A DNA stretch of 64,000 bases. Source: Basidiobolus meristosporus CBS 931.73 (lineage: Eukaryota > Fungi > Basidiobolomycota). The stretch is taken from the NCBI GenBank assembly GCA_002104905.1, contig MCFE01000059.1, positions 124,001 through 188,000 on the forward strand, given 5' to 3'. A program made the position numbers and the translations under genes. Of the stretch, positions 50,767-64,000 are shown one piece after another. The notes below the pieces were generated by a model. The model worked only from the letters and a program-made list of their open reading frames with translations, did no database searches and was not told the DNA's origin. Position 1 is the first letter of the stretch, and each line of letters starts with the position of its first letter.

Positions 50767-53654
50767 TCAATAGGAATTTTTTAAACGATGGTTTTCCTCC
50801 CGTAATTGCTCCAGTTCTTCTTCCATTTTCTGGGTTTGGCTTGCTTGGCTTTCAAGCCAGTCTTCACGCATTTCCTCCTGATTAAACTGGTTAGATATCC
50901 AAGAGCTCCGCCGAGAAAGTCTTTCGCACAATAATGCAAGATTCTTACCTGCTGAATAAACATTTGCCGGACCATTTCCAATTGCATGGCTCTAATTTCT
51001 TCTCGAATTGAGGCTTGAACCTCACTAACATAATCTCTGAGGCACTCTTGCACCACTTGCTGAACCACCTGGACCTGAGTTTCTGAGAAATGCCCTGCCA
51101 TATCTCCAGCATCCCGATGCAGCATATGGTCATTGATTCTGGATGATATTCCTAACGAATCGGCTCCTGGTGTACTAGCTTGGGCCAGTAAGCCCCGTCC
51201 GTTCGGTTTGGGGGTTCCATTAGAAGTAATGCGAGAATGGGTCGTATGATGCCGGATAGCGCCACTTGGGGTCTGAATGAAGAATCGTTAGTATCGGAAG
51301 TCTGTGAAAATCACTAAGGTGGCGACGAAATCATACCTCTCCCGAGTACAATTTAGTAGGCGAATACGGGCTTTTCAGGTTGCTTGAAGCAACGCTACCT
51401 AGAGTTCTTGGGGAATTCGTCAAGCCAATGGGGGTGCTGTACAACACATCTGTATGTCGTGAAGTATTTGTGGGCGTAATAGGCCCACCGGTGACGGACA
51501 AACTTCGTTGGCGAACCTCCTCTCTATCCTGGCTAGGTATCTCCGGATTTACACTGCTACCAGTCACAATCATTGATTTTGGTCGAGTAGCATGACGGCT
51601 ACCAATGCTACGCGTAGAAGGAGTGTTCGTGTTAGGAGATATAAGTGACTCTAGTACACAGGCGTTAGACTTGAAAAGGGATGTCTGACTATCGTTTGTA
51701 GCAAAAGGAATACCTAGTTGCTGTTTACCTCGGATAGGGGAGTATCCGATGGTGCTATCTAAAGTGAATCGTCGCGTATCAGGGGAAATTGATTCGTCCG
51801 CTGAACAATATATCAATAAACGGATCTGATCACACGGACTTGGACAAGGATATACATACCCAACCGATAGGTTGGCTTTGTTTGGAACTTGGACTCCTCT
51901 ATCGATGAATCAAGATCCTCAGCGCCAGGCAAAGTTGGGCCGGTTCGATGATGCGCTATATAGAAGCATTAACCTCAAACCAAACAGAGATCTTGCTATC
52001 ATACAAATGAGACGTCTGTATCTTACGTTCATGAAGCAGTGATGGCGAGCTAAAATCTACGCTTGGCGAGCTAAATAGCGGGCTATTGGGCGAATTTACC
52101 CCAGGCATACTGAATCGCGCTGTGTTGCCAGCGATCCGAGCAATACCAGGGTTTCGTTTGGCACGAGGAGTTTTCACCGGAGCGCCGGTCTAGCAGTGAG
52201 GTTAATACATAAATAAGGGCATTTCAAATGGCTGATTACCGTACGTACTTGATATAGAACGGTCCGAACTCGCTCCCCTTCGATTTGTGTTGTTTTAATA
52301 GGCTCCTTTAAATCCAATTTGTAGGCAAATATTACACCTGAGGGAACGATGCGGGAAAAAACGCTTAATCTCAAGCTTCGAGTTGACCTCTGATAAGGAG
52401 TTACCTTGATTCGTCCCCACAATGAATATTGGGGATTCTGCCGTGCAAGCCAAAGCGGTTAGAGGGGCCGAAGCGGTCCATGTACGAACAGCCCTTTTTC
52501 GCGCGTTACAAAGAGTAATTAGGCCTTTGCCGAATGCTTTGACAATGTCGAATCCCAATGTGATAATTACCTTTTGCGATCCACGTCAAAAACGAAGATC
52601 TTTCTATCTAAACCAACTGAGCACAGCATCATATGATTGAAGGGAGAAAACTGCAATCCAGTAATAGGCGCATGATGTGCGTTCCGCTCAACATGGACTG
52701 TACGCGGAAGCTCTTGAGTGTTCCAGAAGTAGATGTGTCCGTCATCGCCGGCAGCCACCAAGTGGGAACGTTTGGTCGAAAACTCAAGATGAACAAGCCG
52801 CTAAATATGGCTCAGTTAGCTTGGTCCACAGCTCGTGGCATATTAATACACTTTACTTCTGAGGCGTCATGAATCAATTTAGTAGCAGTGTTCTTCATAA
52901 GATTGTGTAGATAGAGAACATTGTCAGCATCTAATGAAGCTAGGAAGCTATCATCGCTATTAATAGCAATAGCTGCAATTGGCCCATTATGCTCTTGCTA
53001 AAAAACCATTAGATTTCCTTCTGGGTGAAAAGGGAAGCTGCGTAAATACCTCCACTCGATCGACAAATTCTCGAGTATTGCAATCCAAGCATCGAAGGAC
53101 GCCGGCGCTTCCACCTATCCAGAGTCGACCAGAACGTGGAGCAAATCGAATTGCTTGTACATTTTCTTGCAACTGGACTTAAAGGTGAGTGCTAGAGATA
53201 AAGTACCAAGAATGTCATTTCACGTACACGTTGTTTGTCCCATAGATCCCATAAAACATATCCATCATTATCTTGATGGTACAGAGAGATAGAATGCTGC
53301 ACATCCAAAATAGCAAGCATAGAGTCTGTTAAATTGAAGGGTTGAGGAAAACATTCAATCGAAGTGCAGTGCATGTCAACTATATATCATCATGGGCGGC
53401 AACTCAAAAAAGATACTCTCAGGATTCCAGCAAACCATAACTGCCTCTGCTTGCAACGGTACAGAGTTGGTTAGGTCCATCTCAGACGCTCTGTTCCACC
53501 AAGTGATATCGGTCTTGGAACCCGTTTCAGGAATAGCCAAGCTGTAAGTGATCAGAGATTTCGAACCGACAAGCAAGGTTCCGCGAGTTAGGGAACTTGT
53601 ACCATTAGCAACACCCATACTGGGAGTATTGGTGTTGGAGGGAATTCTAGACAT
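50767..53654 (-). CDS. NEDD1: NEDD1/GCP-WD-like gamma-tubulin ring complex targeting factor (WD40 propeller plus C-terminal helix)
   Basis: Multi-exon WD40 region: AAGDDGHIYFWN, AHHAPITGLQFSPFNHMMLCSVGLDRKIFVFD, TWTASAPLTALA. A Ser/Pro-rich linker follows. The C-terminal FSETQVQVVQQVVQECL..EIRAMQLEMVRQMFIQQ..LREENHRLK matches the NEDD1 gamma-tubulin-binding helix pattern. Start is tentative. Confidence 0.78.
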
Positions 53655-55847
53655 ATTCCTAGTACTGTTATTGGAAAAGCGCTTTGACAATCAATCGAGG
53701 TAATGTTTCCACAAAATTGCTTTAGTAGGCGGTAATATTTAAAGGATTCTATGTCTACACGGGTAGATATATGAAAATTGAAGTAGCACCCAAGTAAAAT
53801 GCAAGAATAAATAAGTTGGATTGTCAAGGAAACGCAACAAAAGCCAAGTGAATACTATTCAAAATACAACCAATATGTTTGTATTGCCCAACCTCTGACC
53901 TGATATTCATCAAATGCTTGGATTCCTATTTACTTGGATTTCCCAAGCAGATTTCTCGTTTGTATTCTCCAATAATACATCCTATTTAGTGCCTAAACGT
54001 ATTCTATTTTTTTCTCGTTTGTTTTGATAATAAAATTCTTTGCCTTATAGTTAAATTGCCTAGATCTAATTAATGAAAGGTTACCTAAACTATGCGAGTG
54101 TCACGTGCGCCTGAACTCATCAAGGGTAACCCTACCCATCATGTTAATGCTCTTATTTATTGCTAAAATTTCCAACAACAGCGTATGGTGCACTTTTTGC
54201 GAACTGGGCGTATTCGTGAACTCAGCTTCAATATAGGTCTGGAAGGGTTGTGAAAAAGTTTGAGATTCAGCGAGGTCTTTTCATTAATATACTAATGCAC
54301 ACCTCCATGACCTGGTCAGCTTGTTGTGTATTATTGACTCAAGGAGTGCATTGGTTTGGAAAGCAAGGTGCGCGATATTCAGTCGAAATGGCTGGCTAGA
54401 GAATATACAAAATTACATCTTCTTGAGCAAGGTTTCGGCATTCTTGTTTGCATATCGATAGGCTATCGATGGAAAGACGAATTGGCAGGCGAACTTGACA
54501 TCATGCAGCCGGATAACTTTTCTTTTGGAGCCTGTTATCAGGCTATACGTCTCTAAATACAGCCCTTTAGAATTGAAAAATCGTCATGCAAATAAGGAGA
54601 ATAGAAACCATTCATTATTTTCCAGAGCAAGTCGTCGCACATACATTCCAGGATACACATGGCAGGCGTAGATATCTCAATCCGTTTATGAAAACTGTTT
54701 AAAACTCTATTGAGAGTATTCAATGACCCTATTCAACTAATAACCAAACTAGCTACTTATTTACGTAAAGATATGAGGATGGAAGTATATTTCCTCCCCA
54801 TTTTCCTTATTTTTCCATAACATATGGTGGATAAGCTTGTCGTATAATGGTTCATATCCCCCTTCCTCGATAGCCTTGTAAGAGTTGAGGGTAGAGCTCC
54901 TGTAACATTTGTTGAGTTCAAGGTGCGGGAAATACAACTATTGTAGGTAAATACCCGGTTTGATATACATTTGAGAAGCATCTGTCTGGGCTAAAACGTG
55001 CCATACTTCATGTCAGTGTTTGCAAGGGCTTGAACGGATAATGTAACAAGTATTTAAGCCGGAGGGGGTGTTGAATCATCACGTTCTCTATGAAACACAT
55101 CTCACTAAGCAATAGCTAATCAACTTTACCATCATTGTCGAAGCTGCATCCCCATGATATGAGGGATTGGGGCCACAAATCAACTGCGACACTCATTACG
55201 TGTGAGAAGCCCAGGATTAACTCATATTCCAGTGATGATTGTGATTGTGGAAAGACGCCATACAACCTTCCCCTCGCTGAGTACGCAAATGTGACCAAAA
55301 CCCCACAGACCAGAATGAGTTGGATAGTATCATTCTGTCCACCTCTGATGCGTATTCTCACGCTGAATCATTGAATATATCCAAGTTCAGCTACCGATGA
55401 CATTAATGACTGTGGTGGAGGGAACACTCATCAGCAGCACCTGGATGCTACTTTGTATACGCAGAAGTGAAGCTACGAGCATGACAATGCCCCCAAATCA
55501 GATGATCCAATGTACCATTTTATAGAGGATACGTCAGCCTCCTCACTTAAATTAACATTGACATGTATTGTGGATTTTATACAGGCCTCTATTACAAATC
55601 GATGGACATGGTCGATATCCTGGCGAGTTTGCCTTCATGGATGATACGGCCTGGCCTTACCAATATCACAATCTATTATTCTCCAACAATAACTGGGGTT
55701 AAAAATAAGTCATACATCAGTGGTTGTGATTAATGAATGTTCATCATTGTAATCAATCAATCCAACGTGTCAGATATCGCTCATTCTAGTATATAAAACA
55801 GTCCACTGTTGGGGTTTGCTCATCAGCATTCCACATTCCAAATCATT

Positions 55848-56371
55848 ATGAAGGCCCAAAGCGTATACTTGTGTGTACTACTGTTGTGCATTTCCAATAC
55901 TTGCCTGGTTCAAGGTATGTTCTTAGTATCTGATTTTTTGTGCAGGAACGAAACGGTTAACCCCGTAGCTAAGCTCAATCAAGCACCTCGCAGCCTCCAG
56001 CCGAATCTCCGAGCAACAACAAAGAAATCACTAAAGTAATTGAAAGCACATCCATACAATCATCGCAAGGTGCGCAACAAACTCAAGGGAGCATGAACCA
56101 AGGAGGCCCTCAGAATCCACGGAATACAGGGAGTGGAGCCACCCCGACTGGCACGGGAGCAGGCCAAAATCAAACTATAACAAGTACCCAGTCATCCAAC
56201 AACTCGGCGACAGCAACAACACGACCACCCATTGATTATCCTACACCATCAACACATGCAACTGCCTATTTCCCAAATGTGTACAAAAACCCTAACCAGG
56301 GAAATACTCTATATAGTGCAGAATTAACGGCGATTTCTCTTATAATAGGGGTATTTCATTTTATGTGCTGA
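55848..56371 (+). CDS. Small secreted Ser/Thr/Gln-rich protein with GPI-signal-like C-terminus
   Basis: Exon 1 (signal peptide MKAQSVYLCVLLLCISNTCLVQ) is spliced at GTATGT..TAAG to a long exon AQSSTSQPPAESPS..NQGNTLYSAELTAISLIIGVFHFMC. TATAAA lies at ~55791. Confidence 0.7.
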
Positions 56372-56900
56372 ATCCTAAATCACCATGCGGACATACAATC
56401 ATTATAGCATATCCTACACAATACAACGCTGCATGTACCTAAACCGCCATTGTCAAATTGGCTAGATAATTGATTGACTAAGCAATCAATAAATCGAGGT
56501 TAGCCCTTTAATCAGTGAATACACGGTCAATAATGAATCAACTGGAATTTTCCAAGGCTTGGCTGGTGGCACCCATCATGGTACGCTTGTGCATAATGGA
56601 CATAACAATGAGCACGAACATATACCAGCATATGAGAAAACATATTTCTAGAAGAGTAGTACCAAGTATTTATTACCATTAGTATTATCCCAAACTCACA
56701 GCTTATTTCTGCTATATCTCTGCGACACTGCTGTAGCATTCCTCTGAGAGTTTACAGGTGTTTTAGGAGGCACTAAGTCCGCCATAGCTTTGAAGGGTTG
56801 AATTGTATCCTGTTAGCTCTAGCCTACCTGGACACTATTTTCCTTTTATGTATATCCTCCGACCTCCAATGAAAGTGCATACACACTAATGATTTAATCA

Positions 56901-58841
56901 ATCAGATAACCCAGCAAAAGTCAAGGTACTGCTACTCAGATATAATACCGTAATTAGCTTGACTTGTAGAATTTTTCACACAGTATGGTAGCATCTGAAA
57001 ACCTCAGACAAATGGTATATGCGCAGGGCTCAGTGCAAAAGTGTTACTCTGATTGAGAATAGGAAGTGCTCCAAGTCTAATTGATGATGAGGCCTACCTA
57101 TGATACTATGTGGTGAAGGGTTAGCTGTGCATTTATCTATGCAGACCATCTCTACGATATAGCTGGGATATAATTAAGCACATCTTTATATATCATAGAC
57201 CTATTTTGTGGAGAGTTTGTGGTATATACTACTGATTCATATCCTATCTGTCACATGGAGTCTTATCATTCATCTTGTGTACCAGAGCGAAAAATCCCCG
57301 CATCATTTTGCTTACCATTGATATGATATGATCCAAGATTACTTCGCATTTCGGTAGTGAGGAACTGCCACAAGCCGAGCCAGAATATTCAATACTTTTC
57401 TATACGACCATTTTCGTCAAAATGCCTATTCTTGCTGGAGTGAATGTCTGGAATCCCAATGAGATCAACATGGATCACTGATATCCGGTCATATTTCGGC
57501 ACTCCTGGAATGCTGAAAACCACTTCGGTGTAGCCGCCAATCTGATAAAACCTATTATAACGATACAGTTGGAATTGTAAATATCGATTTCTCACAATGT
57601 TACATCATGTGTCCTTTTGGAATTTCCAATAGAATTAAACTTCTCCTTTATAATCAGTTGATCATTTCATCATGGTTGTGCGTGATCACATCTTTTTCCA
57701 ACGAGCACAATCTATTAGTTGGTTTAACATTTTATATTAGTTGACTTTGAATAGCGTAGTAGCACCCAATTACATCGGGAAAAATATAGCGTCTTGGAAA
57801 CCATCCTGACTGGAAACCCTGGATAGGGAAATCTTTTCTGATTATGCTTTACAAAAATACCTTCCAGCCCAATCGTTTTTTTCTGTGGCAACCTTCTAAT
57901 TCATTAACACTATTGATCCCTCATTCATTAGTCTCGACTTCGTTGTTCTTTTTATAAATAGATCAGATTGAGTAAAAGAATCAAGTTTTTCACATATCAG
58001 ATCTTTCCCGAATGTTATTACAAGGGATCCATATTTATATTATTCTTTGATATATTTCTATAGAATCAACCCCGCGTAATTCCTCCATGGAAAATTCACA
58101 CCGTCAATTTATCCTAACCAACAGCTGACCAAGAATCTTGACACCAGGAAGCCTACTTCAATCAATGAAAGTTTTACAGTATATCAGTTGGGTATTGTCC
58201 ATGGGCTTAGAACGATCTATGAGTTGTGACTACAGGTATTTTTATTGACGGCTTACTATATCAATCATGAATTCATACCTTTATATCACTTCTCAGTTAT
58301 CAGATCTCAAATCACCCCATATATTAGACTCTAGAAGAAATACCCAGAGGAGATAAAAGCCTTGTATTACGGTGAACACCATTAGTTAATGCAAAGGTAT
58401 ACGAAAATATTTTCAGGTCTATTTATGGTAATTACAATGTCAAAAGTTCGCACAGATTGTAACTAATGGTGATATGGTTTATAAAGAGCTATTTTGCATT
58501 TCATGCTTCGCTAATGAAAAGTAAACTAGATGAGGCGGAGCCCTAAACCATACAATATTGAAGGCTTCTAGATCGCTTTTTTGTAATTATATCGTGAAGT
58601 CCTACAACATCAAATTTGATTGCAGTACTTATCAGATTGGATGTAAGAAAGAATATATCTGATTGGCGAGTTACTATATAACATTCAGTTACTACAATCA
58701 GATAACATCCACCTCACCATGCTATCTGATTCACATTCAGCAAAGATCTGATTAATGGAAATATTTTTATTGGATGAACATTCCGTGAATGAAGCTTGTA
58801 AAACATATTCAACGAATTATAACCTTTAGAATTTATCAGAT
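56901..58841. promoter_or_regulatory. Cluster of ATCWGATAA iron-responsive GATA-factor (SreA/Fep1/Sfu1-type) sites upstream of the heme oxygenase
   Basis: Exact matches: 56901-56909 (+), 57540-57548 (+), 58297-58305 (-), 58629-58637 (-), 58697-58705 (+), 58833-58841 (-). ATCWGATAT variants at 57994-58002 (-) and 58655-58663 (-); an ATCAGATAG variant at 58722-58730 (-). Confidence 0.75.
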
Positions 58842-59240
58842 GAACCGTGTTAGGAATTTCTCGTGTTGATGGATACAAGTAGGTTTAATCAATTTTAGTA
58901 CAGAAAGTGAGACCATACATTTCTTAAGATTTCAATTTTTCCTGTATAAGCGGAGAAGCAACACACGTTTTCAACGGATTCCTATTGTAGTACAGATTCC
59001 CTTTAATATCAATTGACTCATATTACTTGCAAATCAACCCAGTTGGAGCATCTCAATAGCAAAAAATACATATTTTTGAGTAATTCGCATTTTTGGCGCC
59101 AATAGGCTCCTTCTAGTTTGGGAGAGAAAAAGTATTTAAAGATGATGAGTTGCGACAAATGTACTTTCATTTGATAAAGCATCTCTGATCTAATCCGAAT
59201 AACCGCCCATTAACAATCAAAACCAAACTCATAATAAATC

Positions 59241-62186
59241 ATGGCTCCGAAAGAGGTTGAAGGACTGGTAAACACTTATGAAGATCCTGCTCAATGCCCC
59301 GCATTTCAAAACGGCTGTCCTTATGCAGGCCTCTCCGTTGAGCTAGCTAATGTCAAGGCAACTGAACAATGGTAAGTAAAGCTGACTACACTTTCTATTT
59401 ACGATGCTTACTAAAAGCACCGTTCCATTCTTTTGTTGATTCACATAGCCCCGCTTTCAAAGATGGTAAGGAAAATTAGCACCTCACATGAATGTCACAC
59501 AAATTAACACGAAGTTAGGCTGCCCCTTCACCAACAAAAGTCCTGAAGAGATCAAAGAATTGTTGGAATCAATCCCTAAATCCCACAAACAGTGCCCTGC
59601 TTTTACTTCTGAAGGTATTGATTATGCGACAGCCTTGAGCTAACCTCAATCATTAATGCTTTTTAAATATTAATTAGGTCAAGTGAAGCTTAACGTATGC
59701 ACCGAGGGAAGCTCGTTGTTTGAGGCTTTGAGAGAGTTGAGAACTGATCTCTTCTTACAAGAAGGTTAGTCATCATGAAGGGCTAGCGGGAATACATTTG
59801 TAAGCTTGTTAACACATAAATCTACATTAATAGATGCAGTGATCTTGGCAGAGGAATTGAAGAAGGGTACCCACTCTGTCCACAGACTCGCCGAGCGTTC
59901 GGCTTTCATCAAGTATGCATGGCCCGAATGCTTATTTTGTCTTGGCCTGGTACTAACGCTATAAATAGGCGCTATATGAAAGCCGAGATTGACAGAGAAA
60001 CCTACAAGAAGTTCTTGGTATCCCTATACTTTGTCTATTCGTAGGTGTTACCATGCCAGGAGATGAACATAGAGTGTCAATTAACATCATTTAATATAGC
60101 GCATTGGAGGAAGCGCTTCAGAATTGCGCCGGAAACCCATGCGTATCATTGGTTCATTTCCCAAAGGAATTGGAGAGAAAGGGCTCCTTGATAGCAGGTA
60201 ATTTCTAATCCTAAATCGTATTGAAAGATAGTATTAATACGGGGATCTCTAGATCTGAAATATTTTGGTGTTGAGTCATTGCAAGATCTCAAACCATCAC
60301 CTGCTGTCCAAAAGTATTGTTCCGCCATCAGTGACGCAGCACAGAGCAACCCCGCTCTATTAATTGCCCACAGCTACACCAGATATCTTGGTGATCTCTC
60401 AGGTGGCCAGATCCTATCCAAAAGAATTCAGAAGTCCTTGGCCTTGCCTGGGAACGAGGGAACTAAATTCTATAGCTTCGAACATATCAAGGATCATAAA
60501 GAGTTCAAAGAACTCTATCGTAGCAGATTGAATCAAGTTCATGCTGATAAGACTTTGAAAGGTGAGTGAGCCCCACAGAAATACGTGACCACGCTTATGC
60601 TGATCCCCTGCAATTTAGATCAAATCGTTCAAGAGGCAATTCGTTCTTTTGAATTGAACATCAATATGTTTGCTGAATTCGATCATGTGGTGACTAACCC
60701 TGTCGTAAATGGTATTCACATTTCTAATGAGCATATCGAGTTAAAATGGGCCCTAATTTGTTTCACTATAGATCAGGTTTCTCTTGCGAAGTTGATGCGA
60801 GAGGGTACACACAAGGTCCATCGCCTTGCTGAGAGCTCTCCTTTCATCAAGCAATACATGCGTGGCCATGTAACTGCCGAAGTCTACGGCCGGTTTTTGG
60901 TTTCACTGTATCATGTTTATCAGGCTTTGGAAGAGGAGCTTACACGACATGCATCTGTCGAACCGGTTGCATTAATTCATTTCCCCAACGAGTTGAATAG
61001 AACTGAGGCACTCATCAAAGATTTGCAATTCTACAACGGCTCTGATTGGGCATCCAAATTGGATGTCACTCCCGCGACCCGCCGCTATGTTGAAGGGATT
61101 CGTGATGCATCTGAGCGTAATCCCGCTCTACTTATCGCTCATAGTTATACTCGTTACTTGGGGGATTTGTCAGGTGGTCAAATCCTGGGCAAGAAGACTC
61201 AAAAATCCCTTAATTTGCCACTTGATAACACCGGTATCCAATTCTATACATTCAGTAATATTGAAGACCTGAACGCTTTCAAGAACATGTATCGCGAAAG
61301 ACTGGATATGGTTGAGTCGGACGAGAGCTTAAGAAATGCCATCATTGCAGAGTGCATTCGCTCGTTTGAATACAACATTGGAATATTTTCGGAGTTCGAT
61401 CATACCGTCAAGGAAGAGTCTGAGGAGGAAAAAGGTCTCGCCACTGCTTTGAAACAGGGTACAATGGCTGTTCACAGATTGGCCGAGAACTGTGATTTCA
61501 TAAAGCGTTACATGAAGGGTGAAGTTGATACGGAATCTTATGGGAAATTCCTTTTCTCCCTATACCATGTATATAAGACATTGGAAGAAGAACTACGTAA
61601 GAACGCGCTCAACGAACACATTTCCTTGATCCATTTCCCTGAGGAGCTTGAAAGAACTCCTGCCATCATTCAGGACTTGGAGCATTTCCATGGACCAAAC
61701 TGGAAAGCAAATAGCATCCCAAGCCCAGCAACTCAGGCCTATATGGATGCTATAAAAAAGCTTAGTGCTACAGACCCCGTTTTGTTGGTTGCACATAGCT
61801 ATACGCGCTATCTTGGAGATCTTTCAGGTGGCCAAATACTCCTCAAGAAGATCCAAAAAAGCCTGAATTTGCCAGATGACGCTGGCACCCGATTCTATAG
61901 ATTCCCAAGAGTTAACAATATGAACGACTTCAAGAATTTCTACCGAGAGAGATTGAATGCCATATCCGTAGACCAAAGAACAAAGAATGCTTTGGTTTCT
62001 GAGGCTGGCCGGGCATTTGAGTTGAATATTGGAATCTTTTCTGAGCTTGACCAAGTTCAAGAGTCAAAGAGCAAATCGAGGATGGAATTAGGAAACGTTG
62101 TTCTTGTTCTTGCCTGGATTGTCCTTATTATATCGTATCTGTACAAATTTGGTTACTTGAGCAATTTGACATCGTCTGCCTTTTAG
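59241..62186 (+). CDS. HMX1: Heme oxygenase with three tandem HO domains, N-terminal Cys-Pro repeats and C-terminal TM anchor (~798 aa)
   Basis: Exons 59241-59371, 59449-59465, 59519-59614, 59678-59764, 59834-59912, 59969-60040, 60100-60197, 60253-60561, 60619-60711, 60772-62186 sum to 2397 nt (798 aa plus stop); all introns GT-AG. Three copies each of VHRLAE, HFP.EL.R, AHSYTRYLGDLSGGQIL and FK..YR.RL. Confidence 0.93.
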
Positions 62187-64000
62187 AACAACAATAGGCA
62201 ATTCCAGTCACAACCATTTTGTTTGTAAATGACCCCAGATAACACTTCCTCATGCAATTAAGAATATCATGTATTTAAACAAGTATAATCTGAAGTCTTT
62301 CCGATTATCAAATACCCCAACTCACCAACCCCTCCAATATATTCCGTAGTGATTGAAGTTTCTAGCCATAAATTCGCGTTTTCTTGAAGATTACCGGCAT
62401 GCGCCAGAATGTGTTTAGAGATCTTACAAAGTCTTGGATTGAGAAGTAGCTGGATCGCCATGACTAAAAAAAGAGAATGTTTCGAGTTCGAAAGTGGAGA
62501 TAGCTGATTTGTTAAATGACTCGTTGCTTCTTAAGTAGCAACGTCTTCTTTTATTGATGGCTTATAAAATTGTGCTCAACAACGCCAAACTTCGCAAATA
62601 CGGAACCAGAGAACTGTTGTTACTCGTTGCGTTATGGATCAAGCATCCTTCAATCCTTTCTCACCCTTCTGCTCTAGAACCCATGGCGTGTGTGTTGGTT
62701 GCTAATCGATAATATATTTACATTATTCAAATACCAACCAAATGTTGAAGTATCGGATGCTATTAGGTAAGCATAGAGGCCAAAATAGATGGAAGGCATT
62801 GCTGATCAATGAAACGTTACGTATGTGATTAGGTAAGCTTGGTAAGTTGAGCAGATTTGTCATTTAATGAAGATTGGGTAAGAACGAATGATTAATGAAT
62901 CATTGATATGAATCATAACAACATCGCAACTCCGTCTTTACTAAATGCGCGATGCATGGGGGTACTACTTTGCAGTGCGATGTTTCAAGTCTCTGAGAGT
63001 TTCCAACAAGTATTTGTTCCCCTCTCCTGCCTCAAGAACATCCTTTCATCACCTAATAACCCCCAGAGATTGCTATAATATTACATTACCAAGTATCATC
63101 AATATATTAAACCATGTTTAGGGCATCTGATCTCCCCCTGGGCCAAGGTTATATAGCCCACGAATTGACAGTAGTTTCAGTTGGGTAGTCGATGTCTTAT
63201 CGATCAAAAATCATGAACAGTAATAGGACGAATCAGAGGCTATCAATTCAACTATATTGTGAATAGTGCACAGTACGATATTGTACCCCGCAGTGTCTAT
63301 TGGCCTGACCATTTACTGAATCGAGGGTATGTCTACTGTATGACTTTGATAATGTCTTTCTAATCCAAACCTCGCATGGACATCAATCTTCAACTCTCTA
63401 TTGAAATTCCGATGAGCACAGGCATGGATCGAAGGCTGATAAGCTATACAAGTATAGTTAGTCAAGCCCCCGCCATACTTGCATTGATTGGGCGTGATTT
63501 ATAATCACGCATTGTTGATGAGGCTACATGAGCGCAAAGACTAATATATATCACCGGTTCATTGAACATACCATTACAAAGGTAATGTCTCAAGTAACAC
63601 ATATCGGCAGGGTAATCTCATCCAGAATTGCCACAGTTTCCTTAAGCGGCTACTGCCTATAGGTACTAGAACAATTATTGGGGCGTTTGAATCAGTCAGG
63701 GATTCAAGAAAGAGAGAGAATACTCAGGCATGCCTCAGTTTCGTGGAACGTCGGACCAAACTGATCGATATTTCTAGACTTCAAAGCATATACCAAGCAG
63801 GTGACATCGAGTCAATAGATGAAAACCATCAGTGACTCCTCACTCATGGCAAGTCTCCTCTGATGTATAGTTGGTTTGGGCGGTATTGGATTAGTCTCAG
63901 GGATATGGCAACTGTTGCACGAGGCTAGTTTGCAATATTTTTTGGTTCCCGATTTGGTTTTCACTTGTAATAGCTGGATCGAATAAATGTGCCAGTTTTC

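What the first reader, a model, noticed from the sequence alone, without database searches (positions are those of the whole stretch)
59241..62186. A single polypeptide with three tandem, apparently active heme oxygenase domains
Seen: the spliced 798-aa protein has HO domains at ~59834-60711, ~60772-61410 and ~61430-62060. Each keeps the proximal His (THSVHRLAE, THKVHRLAE, TMAVHRLAE) and an identical distal helix AHSYTRYLGDLSGGQIL (HO-1 Gly139/Asp140/Gly143 equivalents). Each also keeps the propionate-binding FK..YR (Lys179/Arg183 equivalents), and one C-terminal TM anchor follows. The DNA encoding the identical helices differs at most third positions, so this is an old duplication under purifying selection and not an assembly artefact. 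Established: HO-1, HO-2, Hmx1 and HmuO are single-domain. With the CP repeats and the iron-GATA promoter, this looks like an undescribed high-capacity heme-to-iron machine. It might pool three active sites on one reductase-docking anchor, pass heme or electrons between domains, or use some domains as heme stores.
Basis: partly seen in the sequence, partly recalled or inferred. Interest (0 to 1): 0.92.

Follow-up and report, generated by a model that had tools for sequence, protein, structure and literature searches.

The report
Three-domain heme oxygenase of Basidiobolus
A gut-associated fungus (Basidiobolus meristosporus) makes one membrane-anchored protein carrying three complete, apparently working copies of the heme-degrading enzyme heme oxygenase; the gene is real, transcribed as one mRNA and probably switched on by iron shortage, but it is an unusual variant of a well-known enzyme, not a new kind of machine.

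Summary
Window 59241-62186 (+) is one 10-exon gene of Basidiobolus meristosporus CBS 931.73.

- **Transcript:** The public 818-aa model wrongly keeps in-frame intron 9.
- **Architecture:** a disordered N-terminal module with five Cys-Pro motifs, three Pfam Heme_oxygenase domains, and one C-terminal tail anchor.
- **Catalytic residues:** all three domains keep every HO-1 heme-binding and catalytic residue checked.
- **Selection:** the domains are about 55% identical to each other. B. ranarum has the same three domains, each about 82% identical to its orthologue, with pN about 0.1 against saturated pS. The triplication is therefore old and all three copies are constrained.
- **Regulation:** six of the window's seven ATCWGATAA (SreA-type iron-GATA) boxes lie within 2.4 kb upstream. 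B. ranarum has seven of seven boxes upstream.
- **Structure:** AlphaFold gives three confident HO folds on short flexible linkers, with no confident inter-domain packing.

The architecture is not unique. A chiton has four tandem HO domains and cartilaginous and early ray-finned fishes have two or three, each arising independently. I found no paper on any of them.

Verdict: a new variant of a known kind. It is most likely an iron-starvation-induced HO with three active sites. Cooperation between domains is untested.

The parts
56901..58841 (.). Cluster of six ATCWGATAA (SreA/Fep1-type iron-GATA) boxes, 408-2340 bp upstream of the ATG
   Evidence: 6 of the 7 sites in the 64-kb window lie here (2.1 expected in the whole window). 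Poisson P about 3e-10. B. ranarum has 7 of 7 sites within 1.9 kb upstream of its orthologue.
59185..62238 (+). Transcribed region seen in cDNA-like contigs (5' UTR from 59185, 3' UTR to 62238)
   Evidence: two intron-free contigs of run X1 cover 59185-60492 and about 60506-62238. A 13-nt gap between them lies inside exon 8.
59241..62186 (+). Coding gene, 10 exons, 798 aa, stop codon at 62184-62186
   Evidence: exon threading. (all nine GT..AG introns spliced). (the same nine introns in B. ranarum).
59241..59760 (+). N-terminal Cys-Pro module (aa 1-109, exons 1-4): two CPAFxxGCP(Y/F) units plus a third CPAF; HRM-like
   Evidence: CP positions. (C19, F22, C26, P27, C44, F47, G50, C51, P52 and F53 are at least 90% conserved in 28 zygomycete HOs). 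(no Pfam family). (pLDDT 29-68).
59449..59465 (+). 17-nt micro-exon encoding part of the second CPAFKDG unit
   Evidence: 16 letters lie between the joint 59371 to 59518. (conserved in B. ranarum and in Syncephalis, L002:3547-3563).
59834..60711 (+). HO domain 1 (aa 110-327; exons 5-9, four internal introns); proximal His127, Asp241
   Evidence: pLDDT above 90; TM 0.95, rmsd 1.0 A to human HO-2 5uc8.
60712..60771 (+). Intron 9 (60 nt, in frame, no stop), retained in the public 818-aa model
   Evidence: spliced in cDNA. (the orthologous intron is 67 nt in B. ranarum, so it cannot be read through)..
60772..61409 (+). HO domain 2 (aa 328-540); proximal His344, Asp459
   Evidence: pLDDT mostly above 90.
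61434..62060 (+). HO domain 3 (aa 549-757); proximal His562, Asp677
   Evidence: E 5.6e-54 to human HO-2..
62091..62159 (+). Single C-terminal transmembrane tail anchor (aa 768-790)
   Evidence: the only Kyte-Doolittle peak above 1.6. (helix 766-785 in the orthologue model).

Best explanation
This is one gene and one mRNA encoding a 798-aa tail-anchored protein that faces the cytosol from the ER membrane. Three canonical HO-1/HO-2-type heme oxygenase domains are strung on 4-8-residue flexible linkers behind a disordered N-terminal module of five Cys-Pro motifs.

Shown here:
- the three domains sit in a single transcript;
- every heme-binding and oxygen-activating residue checked is intact in all three;
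- purifying selection is strong and equal on all three;
- the triplication happened inside the Basidiobolus lineage, before B. meristosporus and B. ranarum split;
- a cluster of iron-GATA boxes lies upstream and is conserved between the two species.

Inferred:
- Each domain independently binds heme and, with electrons from NADPH-cytochrome P450 reductase, cleaves it to biliverdin, CO and Fe2+. One membrane anchor would then carry three active sites.
- This may act as a covalent stand-in for the oligomers that stabilise mammalian HO-1.
- The gene is repressed by an SreA/Fep1-type GATA factor when iron is plentiful and induced in iron starvation. It would then release iron from scavenged or endogenous heme.
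- The Cys-Pro module, inherited from a single-domain zygomycete ancestor, binds extra heme or acts as a thiol/disulfide switch, like the HRMs of HO-2.
For: - **Pfam:** three Heme_oxygenase stretches, 650 bits, two of them in one uninterrupted exon.
- **Single transcript:** cDNA-like contigs splice all nine introns. They link the N-module to D1, and the C-terminus of D1 to D2, D3 and the TM.
- **Orthologue:** the same architecture and the same nine introns occur in B. ranarum.
- **Residues:** H25, E29, Y58, Y134, T135, R136, G139, D140, S142, G143, G144, K149, K153, K179, R183, F207, N210 and F214 equivalents are present in all six Basidiobolus domains.
- **Selection:** pN is 0.09-0.11 and pS 0.7-0.9 in each domain. 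The identical distal helices differ synonymously at 10-13 of 17 codons.
- **Origin:** the six domains form one clade (92/92) with three orthologue pairs at 100/99.
- **Fold:** E 1e-52 to 1e-54 to solved HO-1 and HO-2. The D1 model has TM 0.95 to HO-2. All three domains have high pLDDT.
- **Anchor:** a single C-terminal TM.
- **Regulation:** the GATA-box cluster is significant and conserved. ATCWGATAA is the SreA consensus (PMC2610380, found).
- **HRM analogy:** HO-2 HRMs bind a second heme and form a redox switch (PMC11900463). HO-2 motifs read KCPYYA and GCPCH, against fungal GCPYA and GCPFT.
- **Oligomer analogy:** HO-1 oligomerisation matters for stability and function (Hwang 2009, cited in PMC9277552).
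- **Paralogues:** no single-domain Basidiobolus HO appeared among the best hits.
Against: - No biochemical data exist; activity of each domain is inferred from sequence alone.
- No single cDNA contig spans the whole CDS. A 13-nt gap lies inside exon 8.
- Run X1 is labelled 'DNA?'. Its RNA origin is inferred only from the absence of introns.
- There are no expression data under iron or heme regimes, and an SreA orthologue in this genome was not looked for.
- Very short linkers could sterically prevent all three domains from docking the reductase at once.
- The position equivalent to HO-1 Lys22 is His, His and Met in the three domains.
- AlphaFold gives no confident domain arrangement (pTM 0.49).
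Confidence: 0.7

Rival explanations
1. Only one or two of the domains turn over heme in vivo. The others act as heme buffers, chaperones or regulatory sensors, as HO-2 has been proposed to buffer labile heme.
For: HO-2 binds and buffers heme (PMC8808069, listed). Short linkers may limit reductase access to the inner domains. Position 22 differs between domains: His, His and Met.
Against: A store would need only the proximal His and the pocket. Yet the oxygen-activating distal helix (G139, D140, S142, G143, G144) and the Y58/R136/N210 network are identical in all three domains of both species. This holds despite saturated synonymous change. Constraint is equal across domains.
Confidence: 0.13
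2. The main role is not iron acquisition. It is heme detoxification in a heme-rich gut or dung habitat, or supply of biliverdin or CO for signalling or photoreception.
For: Cys-Pro motifs are typical heme sensors. In B. ranarum a GAF-histidine kinase gene lies 2.9 kb downstream. Basidiobolus lives in animal guts (general knowledge).
Against: The conserved cluster of iron-repressor boxes in both species points to control by iron, not heme. The neighbouring kinase has no PAS_2 or PHY phytochrome domains on record. Synteny could not be checked because the window ends.
Confidence: 0.12
3. The polypeptide is a precursor that is cut in the linkers into single-domain enzymes, of which only the last stays membrane-bound.
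For: The linkers are the only low-confidence stretches between the domains. Mammalian HO-1 is known to be proteolytically released from its anchor (PMC9277552).
Against: The linkers are only 4-8 residues and show no recognisable processing motif. There is no precedent for a cytosolic HO polyprotein.
Confidence: 0.04
4. Artefact: separate tandem genes fused by gene prediction, or an assembly collapse or expansion.
For: The public model contains one error, a retained intron.
Against: One continuous ORF (60585-62186) already joins the end of D1 to D2, D3 and the TM. cDNA contigs cross every junction. An independent assembly of another species has the same architecture. The domains are 55% identical, so they are not collapsed repeats.
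Confidence: 0.01

Closest known systems
Mammalian HO-1 / HO-2 (EC 1.14.14.18, Pfam PF01126)
   Same: Each domain is 38-45% identical to HO-1/HO-2. All catalytic and heme-contact residues checked are shared. The D1 model has the same fold (TM 0.95). The C-terminal tail anchor is shared. Cys-Pro motifs of the CP(Y/F) type occur as in HO-2.
   Different: There are three catalytic domains per chain instead of one. The Cys-Pro motifs are N-terminal and number five; in HO-2 there are two or three, lying between the core and the anchor. The tether from the last domain to the membrane is about 10 residues, against about 40 in HO-1.
Single-domain zygomycete HOs with the N-terminal CPAFxxGCP(Y/F) module (Mucor, Apophysomyces, Cunninghamella, Circinella, Bifiguratus, Syncephalis)
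   Same: The N-terminal module, the HO core, the tail anchor and several intron positions are shared, including the 17-nt micro-exon. These proteins represent the ancestral architecture.
   Different: They have one HO domain. In Basidiobolus the domain is triplicated, and D2 plus D3 lie in one intron-free exon.
Predicted multi-domain HOs: chiton Liolophura sinensis (4 domains, XP_064613781.1); 'heme oxygenase 1a' of sharks, rays, eels, bonytongues and bowfin (2-3 domains)
   Same: Tandem canonical HO domains followed by one C-terminal anchor. None was found described in the literature.
   Different: They have independent origins, forming separate clades. They lack a Cys-Pro module and have longer linkers. 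Their domains are much more alike: 64-76% in the chiton and 91-99% in fishes, against 55% here.
Fungal iron-regulated HOs (S. cerevisiae Hmx1, C. albicans Hmx1)
   Same: ER-anchored heme-degrading enzymes induced by iron deprivation to reuse heme iron (general knowledge, not tested here). This is the same predicted physiological logic.
   Different: They are single-domain and much more divergent from HO-1. Regulation in yeast is by Aft1, not by an SreA-type GATA repressor.

Membership tests
Canonical heme oxygenase (Pfam PF01126; HO-1/HO-2/HmuO type) | Full-length match to the Heme_oxygenase profile above the gathering score | tested here: met
   three stretches, 650.6 bits against a cut-off of 23; the best-scoring stretch covers profile positions 2-204 of 204. 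One search agrees.
Canonical heme oxygenase (Pfam PF01126; HO-1/HO-2/HmuO type) | Proximal His ligand (HO-1 His25) with Glu29 | tested here: met
   His127, His344 and His562, with Glu present in all three domains of both species.
Canonical heme oxygenase (Pfam PF01126; HO-1/HO-2/HmuO type) | Distal helix G139-D140-x-S142-G143-G144 and the Y58/R136/N210 hydrogen-bond network | tested here: met
   identical in all three domains.
Canonical heme oxygenase (Pfam PF01126; HO-1/HO-2/HmuO type) | Propionate anchors K18, Y134, K179 and R183 | tested here: met
   K or R at position 18; Y, K and R conserved in all three. Position 22 varies (His, His, Met).
Canonical heme oxygenase (Pfam PF01126; HO-1/HO-2/HmuO type) | All-helical HO fold | tested here: met
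   the D1 model has TM 0.95 and rmsd 1.0 A to 5uc8. D1-D3 pLDDT is mostly 84-98.
Canonical heme oxygenase (Pfam PF01126; HO-1/HO-2/HmuO type) | Heme cleavage to biliverdin, CO and iron, with reductase-supplied electrons | not testable with these tools
   Needs enzyme assays.
Heme regulatory motif (HRM) as in HO-2, ALAS, Bach1 | Cys-Pro dipeptide followed by a hydrophobic residue, in a flexible region | tested here: met
   five CP(A/Y/F) motifs; pLDDT 29-68. Cys and Pro are at least 90% conserved.
Heme regulatory motif (HRM) as in HO-2, ALAS, Bach1 | Binds ferric heme through the Cys thiolate, or forms a redox-switch disulfide | not testable with these tools
   A Cys4 metal site (two CX6C pairs) is not excluded.
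SreA/Fep1-type iron-GATA regulon | Clustered ATCWGATAA boxes in the promoter | tested here: met
   6 and 7 boxes in the two species, P about 3e-10 and 2e-11.
SreA/Fep1-type iron-GATA regulon | Iron-dependent repression by a GATA factor encoded in the genome | not tested
   No expression data under iron regimes were available, and the regulator was not searched for.
Tail-anchored ER membrane protein | Single TM within about 30 residues of the C-terminus and no signal peptide | tested here: met
   the only hydrophobic peak is aa 763-791 of 798. The N-terminus is hydrophilic.

The most novel reading that the evidence does not exclude
Concatenating HO domains may be a convergent way to build a high-flux heme-to-iron line. 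In Basidiobolus the N-terminal Cys-Pro module would capture heme and hand it to three tethered active sites, which would share one reductase encounter at the membrane. The chain would then behave cooperatively, with more than three hemes bound and non-additive kinetics. The independent 4-domain version in a magnetite-mineralising chiton would reflect the same pressure for iron.
Probability: 0.15. Interest if true: 0.8.

Novelty: new variant of a known kind. Interest (0 to 1): 0.55.

Why it matters
Heme oxygenases are textbook single-domain enzymes. Their stoichiometry with the reductase, their oligomerisation and the role of Cys-Pro motifs are still debated.

A natural chain with three diverged but fully conserved active sites, kept for a long time in a fungal genus that includes an agent of human gut and skin disease, offers a ready-made system for several questions:
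- whether neighbouring HO sites cooperate;
- how many reductase contacts are needed;
- what N-terminal HRM-like modules do.

The iron-box promoter makes it a candidate heme-iron acquisition gene. The independent chiton and fish versions suggest a recurrent selective advantage to concatenation that nobody has examined.

Tried and rejected
- **RNA runs:** a search for RNA runs listed none. The 'any' search gave runs labelled 'DNA?', of which X1 proved cDNA-like.
- **N-terminal module:** Pfam at E up to 10 and the ESM-Atlas feature and structure searches gave no family. The only weak lead was the HRM-bearing ALAS presequence.
- **Domain packing:** full-length AlphaFold was run to see packing, but pTM 0.49 gave no usable arrangement. 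The alignment placed all single-domain homologues on D2, so D1 and D3 had shallow depth.
- **dS and dN/dS:** dS was saturated between the species and between the paralogues, so only pN and pS are reported.
- **Literature:** searches for tandem, multi-domain or Basidiobolus HOs and for chiton HO found nothing relevant.
- **Phytochrome-supply idea:** considered because of the GAF kinase next to the B. ranarum gene, but set aside. No PAS_2 or PHY domains are on record and synteny is not checkable.
- **Genome-contig scan:** not used, because that collection holds only bacteria and archaea.
Full report
**Identity and gene model.** The window is from Basidiobolus meristosporus CBS 931.73. The best database hit of the last exon is the organism's own protein ORY02253.1 (P0001, 818 aa, 100% identical). 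The public 818-aa model differs only by keeping intron 9 (60712-60771; 60 nt, in frame, no stop).

**Transcript evidence.** Laying public runs on 58700-62700 showed that run X1, labelled 'DNA?', holds two contigs that lack all nine introns.
- They use exactly the predicted junctions, including the 17-nt micro-exon 59449-59465 and intron 9.
- One contig covers 59185-60492, that is the 5' UTR, the N-module and most of D1.
- The other covers about 60506-62238, that is the end of exon 8, exon 9, D2, D3, the TM and the 3' UTR.
- The only gap is 13 nt inside exon 8, in the middle of domain 1.
- The mechanical ORF 60585-62186 already joins the last helix of D1 to D2, D3 and the anchor.

The locus is therefore one mRNA and the 798-aa model is the right one. 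B. ranarum (P0002, 796 aa, 81% identical) has the same nine introns. Its intron 9 is 67 nt, so it cannot be read through.

**The three domains.** Pfam finds three full Heme_oxygenase stretches in both species. D2 and D3 match solved HO-1 and HO-2 at E 1e-52 to 1e-54. I aligned the six Basidiobolus domains to a mammalian HO-1 with the standard numbering. Every residue I checked is kept in all six:
- H25, E29 and Y58;
- Y134, T135 and R136;
- G139, D140, S142, G143 and G144;
- K149 and K153;
- K179 and R183;
- F207, N210 and F214;
- K or R at position 18.

Only position 22 varies (His, His, Met). The proximal histidines are H127, H344 and H562, and the Asp140 equivalents are D241, D459 and D677.

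AlphaFold models give the following.
- pLDDT is mostly above 90 for D1 and D2 and 83-96 for D3.
- The D1 model superposes on human HO-2 with TM 0.95 and rmsd 1.0 A.
- The linkers (about 7 and 4 residues) and the 8 residues before the TM helix are low-confidence.
- The whole-chain pTM is 0.49, so the picture is beads on a short string with no confident packing.
- A single hydrophobic segment (aa 763-791 of 798) makes it a tail-anchored protein like HO-1.

**Age and selection.** The domains are 54.5-55% identical to one another. The identical 17-residue distal helix is encoded by sequences differing at 10-13 of 17 codons, all synonymously. Between the two species each domain is about 82% identical, with pN 0.09-0.11 and pS 0.7-0.9, which is saturated. 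Constraint is equally strong on all three.

In a maximum-likelihood tree of 39 HO domains:
- the six Basidiobolus domains form one clade (92/92) made of three orthologue pairs (100/99 each);
- this clade sits among zygomycete HOs;
- the stems leading to each pair (0.31-0.36) are longer than the species split (0.18-0.22 path).

The triplication therefore happened within the Basidiobolus lineage, well before the two species separated.

The intron map adds a detail. The N-module and D1 keep introns shared with the single-domain HO of Syncephalis plumigaleata. D2 and D3 lie in one intron-free 1415-nt exon. Introns 4 and 9 are both phase 1 in the Asp codon that opens D1 and D2. This fits duplication of a unit bounded by that intron, followed by intron loss or a processed-copy origin for D2 and D3. 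That last step is my inference.

**The N-terminal module.** Residues 1-109 carry CP at C19, C26, C44, C51 and C75, arranged as two CPAFxxGCP(Y/F) units and a third CPAF.
- The same module precedes a single HO domain in Mucorales, Bifiguratus and Syncephalis.
- C19, F22, C26, P27, C44, F47, G50, C51, P52 and F53 are at least 90% conserved across 28 proteins. It is therefore ancestral, not part of the novelty of the triplication.
- It has no Pfam family and is predicted disordered.
- The motifs resemble the HO-2 HRMs: KCPYYA and GCPCH in the HO-2 sequences retrieved, against GCPYA and GCPFT here.
- In HO-2 these motifs bind a second heme, form a thiol/disulfide switch and lie near the reductase (PMC11900463).

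I take an HRM-like role as the leading hypothesis. A Cys4 metal site formed by the two CX6C pairs is not excluded.

**Regulation.**
- Six of the seven matches in the 64-kb window lie 408-2340 bp upstream of the ATG. Only 2.1 are expected in the whole window, giving Poisson P about 3e-10.
- In B. ranarum all seven matches in 14.5 kb lie 434-1905 bp upstream of the orthologue, P about 2e-11.
- ATCWGATAA is the consensus of the iron-responsive GATA repressor SreA (PMC2610380).

Iron-repressed expression is thus a well-founded prediction, but no expression data under iron regimes were available.

No other canonical HO of Basidiobolus appeared among the best 120 hits, either of the two-domain search or of a D1-only search. 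This may therefore be the genus's main HO, though the check is not exhaustive.

**How unusual is it?** A HMMER scan of 1.84 billion cluster representatives with the whole protein gave only four clusters scoring as multi-domain.
- **Basidiobolus:** three domains, about 55% identical to each other.
- **Chiton Liolophura sinensis:** 985-987 aa with four tandem HO domains and a TM, as an uninterrupted ORF on a 5-kb contig. Its domains are 64-76% identical.
- **Fishes, two clusters:** the word-index search shows two-domain 'heme oxygenase 1a' models in sharks, rays, eels, tarpon, bonytongues and bowfin, and a three-domain one in Pristis. Their domains are 91-99% identical and group by species.

The tree places the chiton, fish and fungal sets in separate clades, so the architecture arose at least three times. 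The Basidiobolus domains are the most diverged from one another. Five literature searches found no description of any such protein.

**Mechanism and verdict.** The best-supported reading is an iron-starvation-induced, ER tail-anchored enzyme with three independently active HO sites and an inherited HRM-like heme-binding or redox module.
- **Why three sites?** The likeliest benefit is more catalytic capacity and stability per inserted anchor. This would be a covalent analogue of the HO-1 oligomers reported to be needed for stability and function (Hwang et al. 2009, cited in PMC9277552).
- **Cooperation:** passing of heme or electrons between domains is possible but has no support from the model or the sequence.
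- **Storage-only domains:** these are disfavoured because the oxygen-activating residues are as conserved as the heme ligands.
- **Fusion artefact:** this is excluded.

I rate it a new variant of a known kind, with moderate interest.

Noticed in passing
L003:948-3905 (Logan contig of SRR26493809); P0121/P0262 = XP_064613781.1: The chiton Liolophura sinensis encodes a 985-987 aa protein with four tandem canonical HO domains and a C-terminal TM. The domains are 64-76% identical and form their own clade. Chitons mineralise magnetite teeth; a link to iron demand is untested.
   Followed up: partly
P0003-P0023 (fish 'heme oxygenase 1a' models): Sharks, rays and early-branching ray-finned fishes have HO-1a models with two HO domains (Pristis has three). 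The domains are 91-99% identical within a protein and cluster by species. This suggests concerted evolution or repeated recent duplication.
   Followed up: partly
window 60712-60771: The public protein model ORY02253.1 (818 aa) retains in-frame intron 9. cDNA contigs and the B. ranarum orthologue support 798 aa.
   Followed up: yes
window 59449-59465; L001:6044-6060; L002:3547-3563: A 17-nt micro-exon inside the second CPAFxxGCPF unit is conserved from Basidiobolus to Syncephalis plumigaleata.
   Followed up: yes
window 59765-59833 and 60712-60771 versus 60772-62186: Introns 4 and 9 are both phase 1 in the Asp codon that opens D1 and D2. D1 keeps ancestral introns, while D2 and D3 sit in one intron-free exon. 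This hints at how the triplication arose.
   Followed up: partly
L001:11703-13403 (B. ranarum): A GAF-HisKA-HATPase_c-Response_reg hybrid kinase gene lies 2.9 kb downstream of the B. ranarum triple HO. No phytochrome PAS_2 or PHY domains are on record. The equivalent position in B. meristosporus is beyond the window's end.
   Followed up: no
window 52000-59200 and 62200-64000: No ORF of note flanks the gene. Earlier notes of the scan place telomere-associated retroelements 2.4-6 kb beyond the window's end, so the gene appears subtelomeric.
   Followed up: no
A1 (28 zygomycete HOs), aa 1-109 of the window protein: The N-terminal CPAFxxGCP(Y/F) x2 module is widely conserved in Mucorales, Bifiguratus and Syncephalis HOs. 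It has no Pfam family, and I found no description of it.
   Followed up: partly
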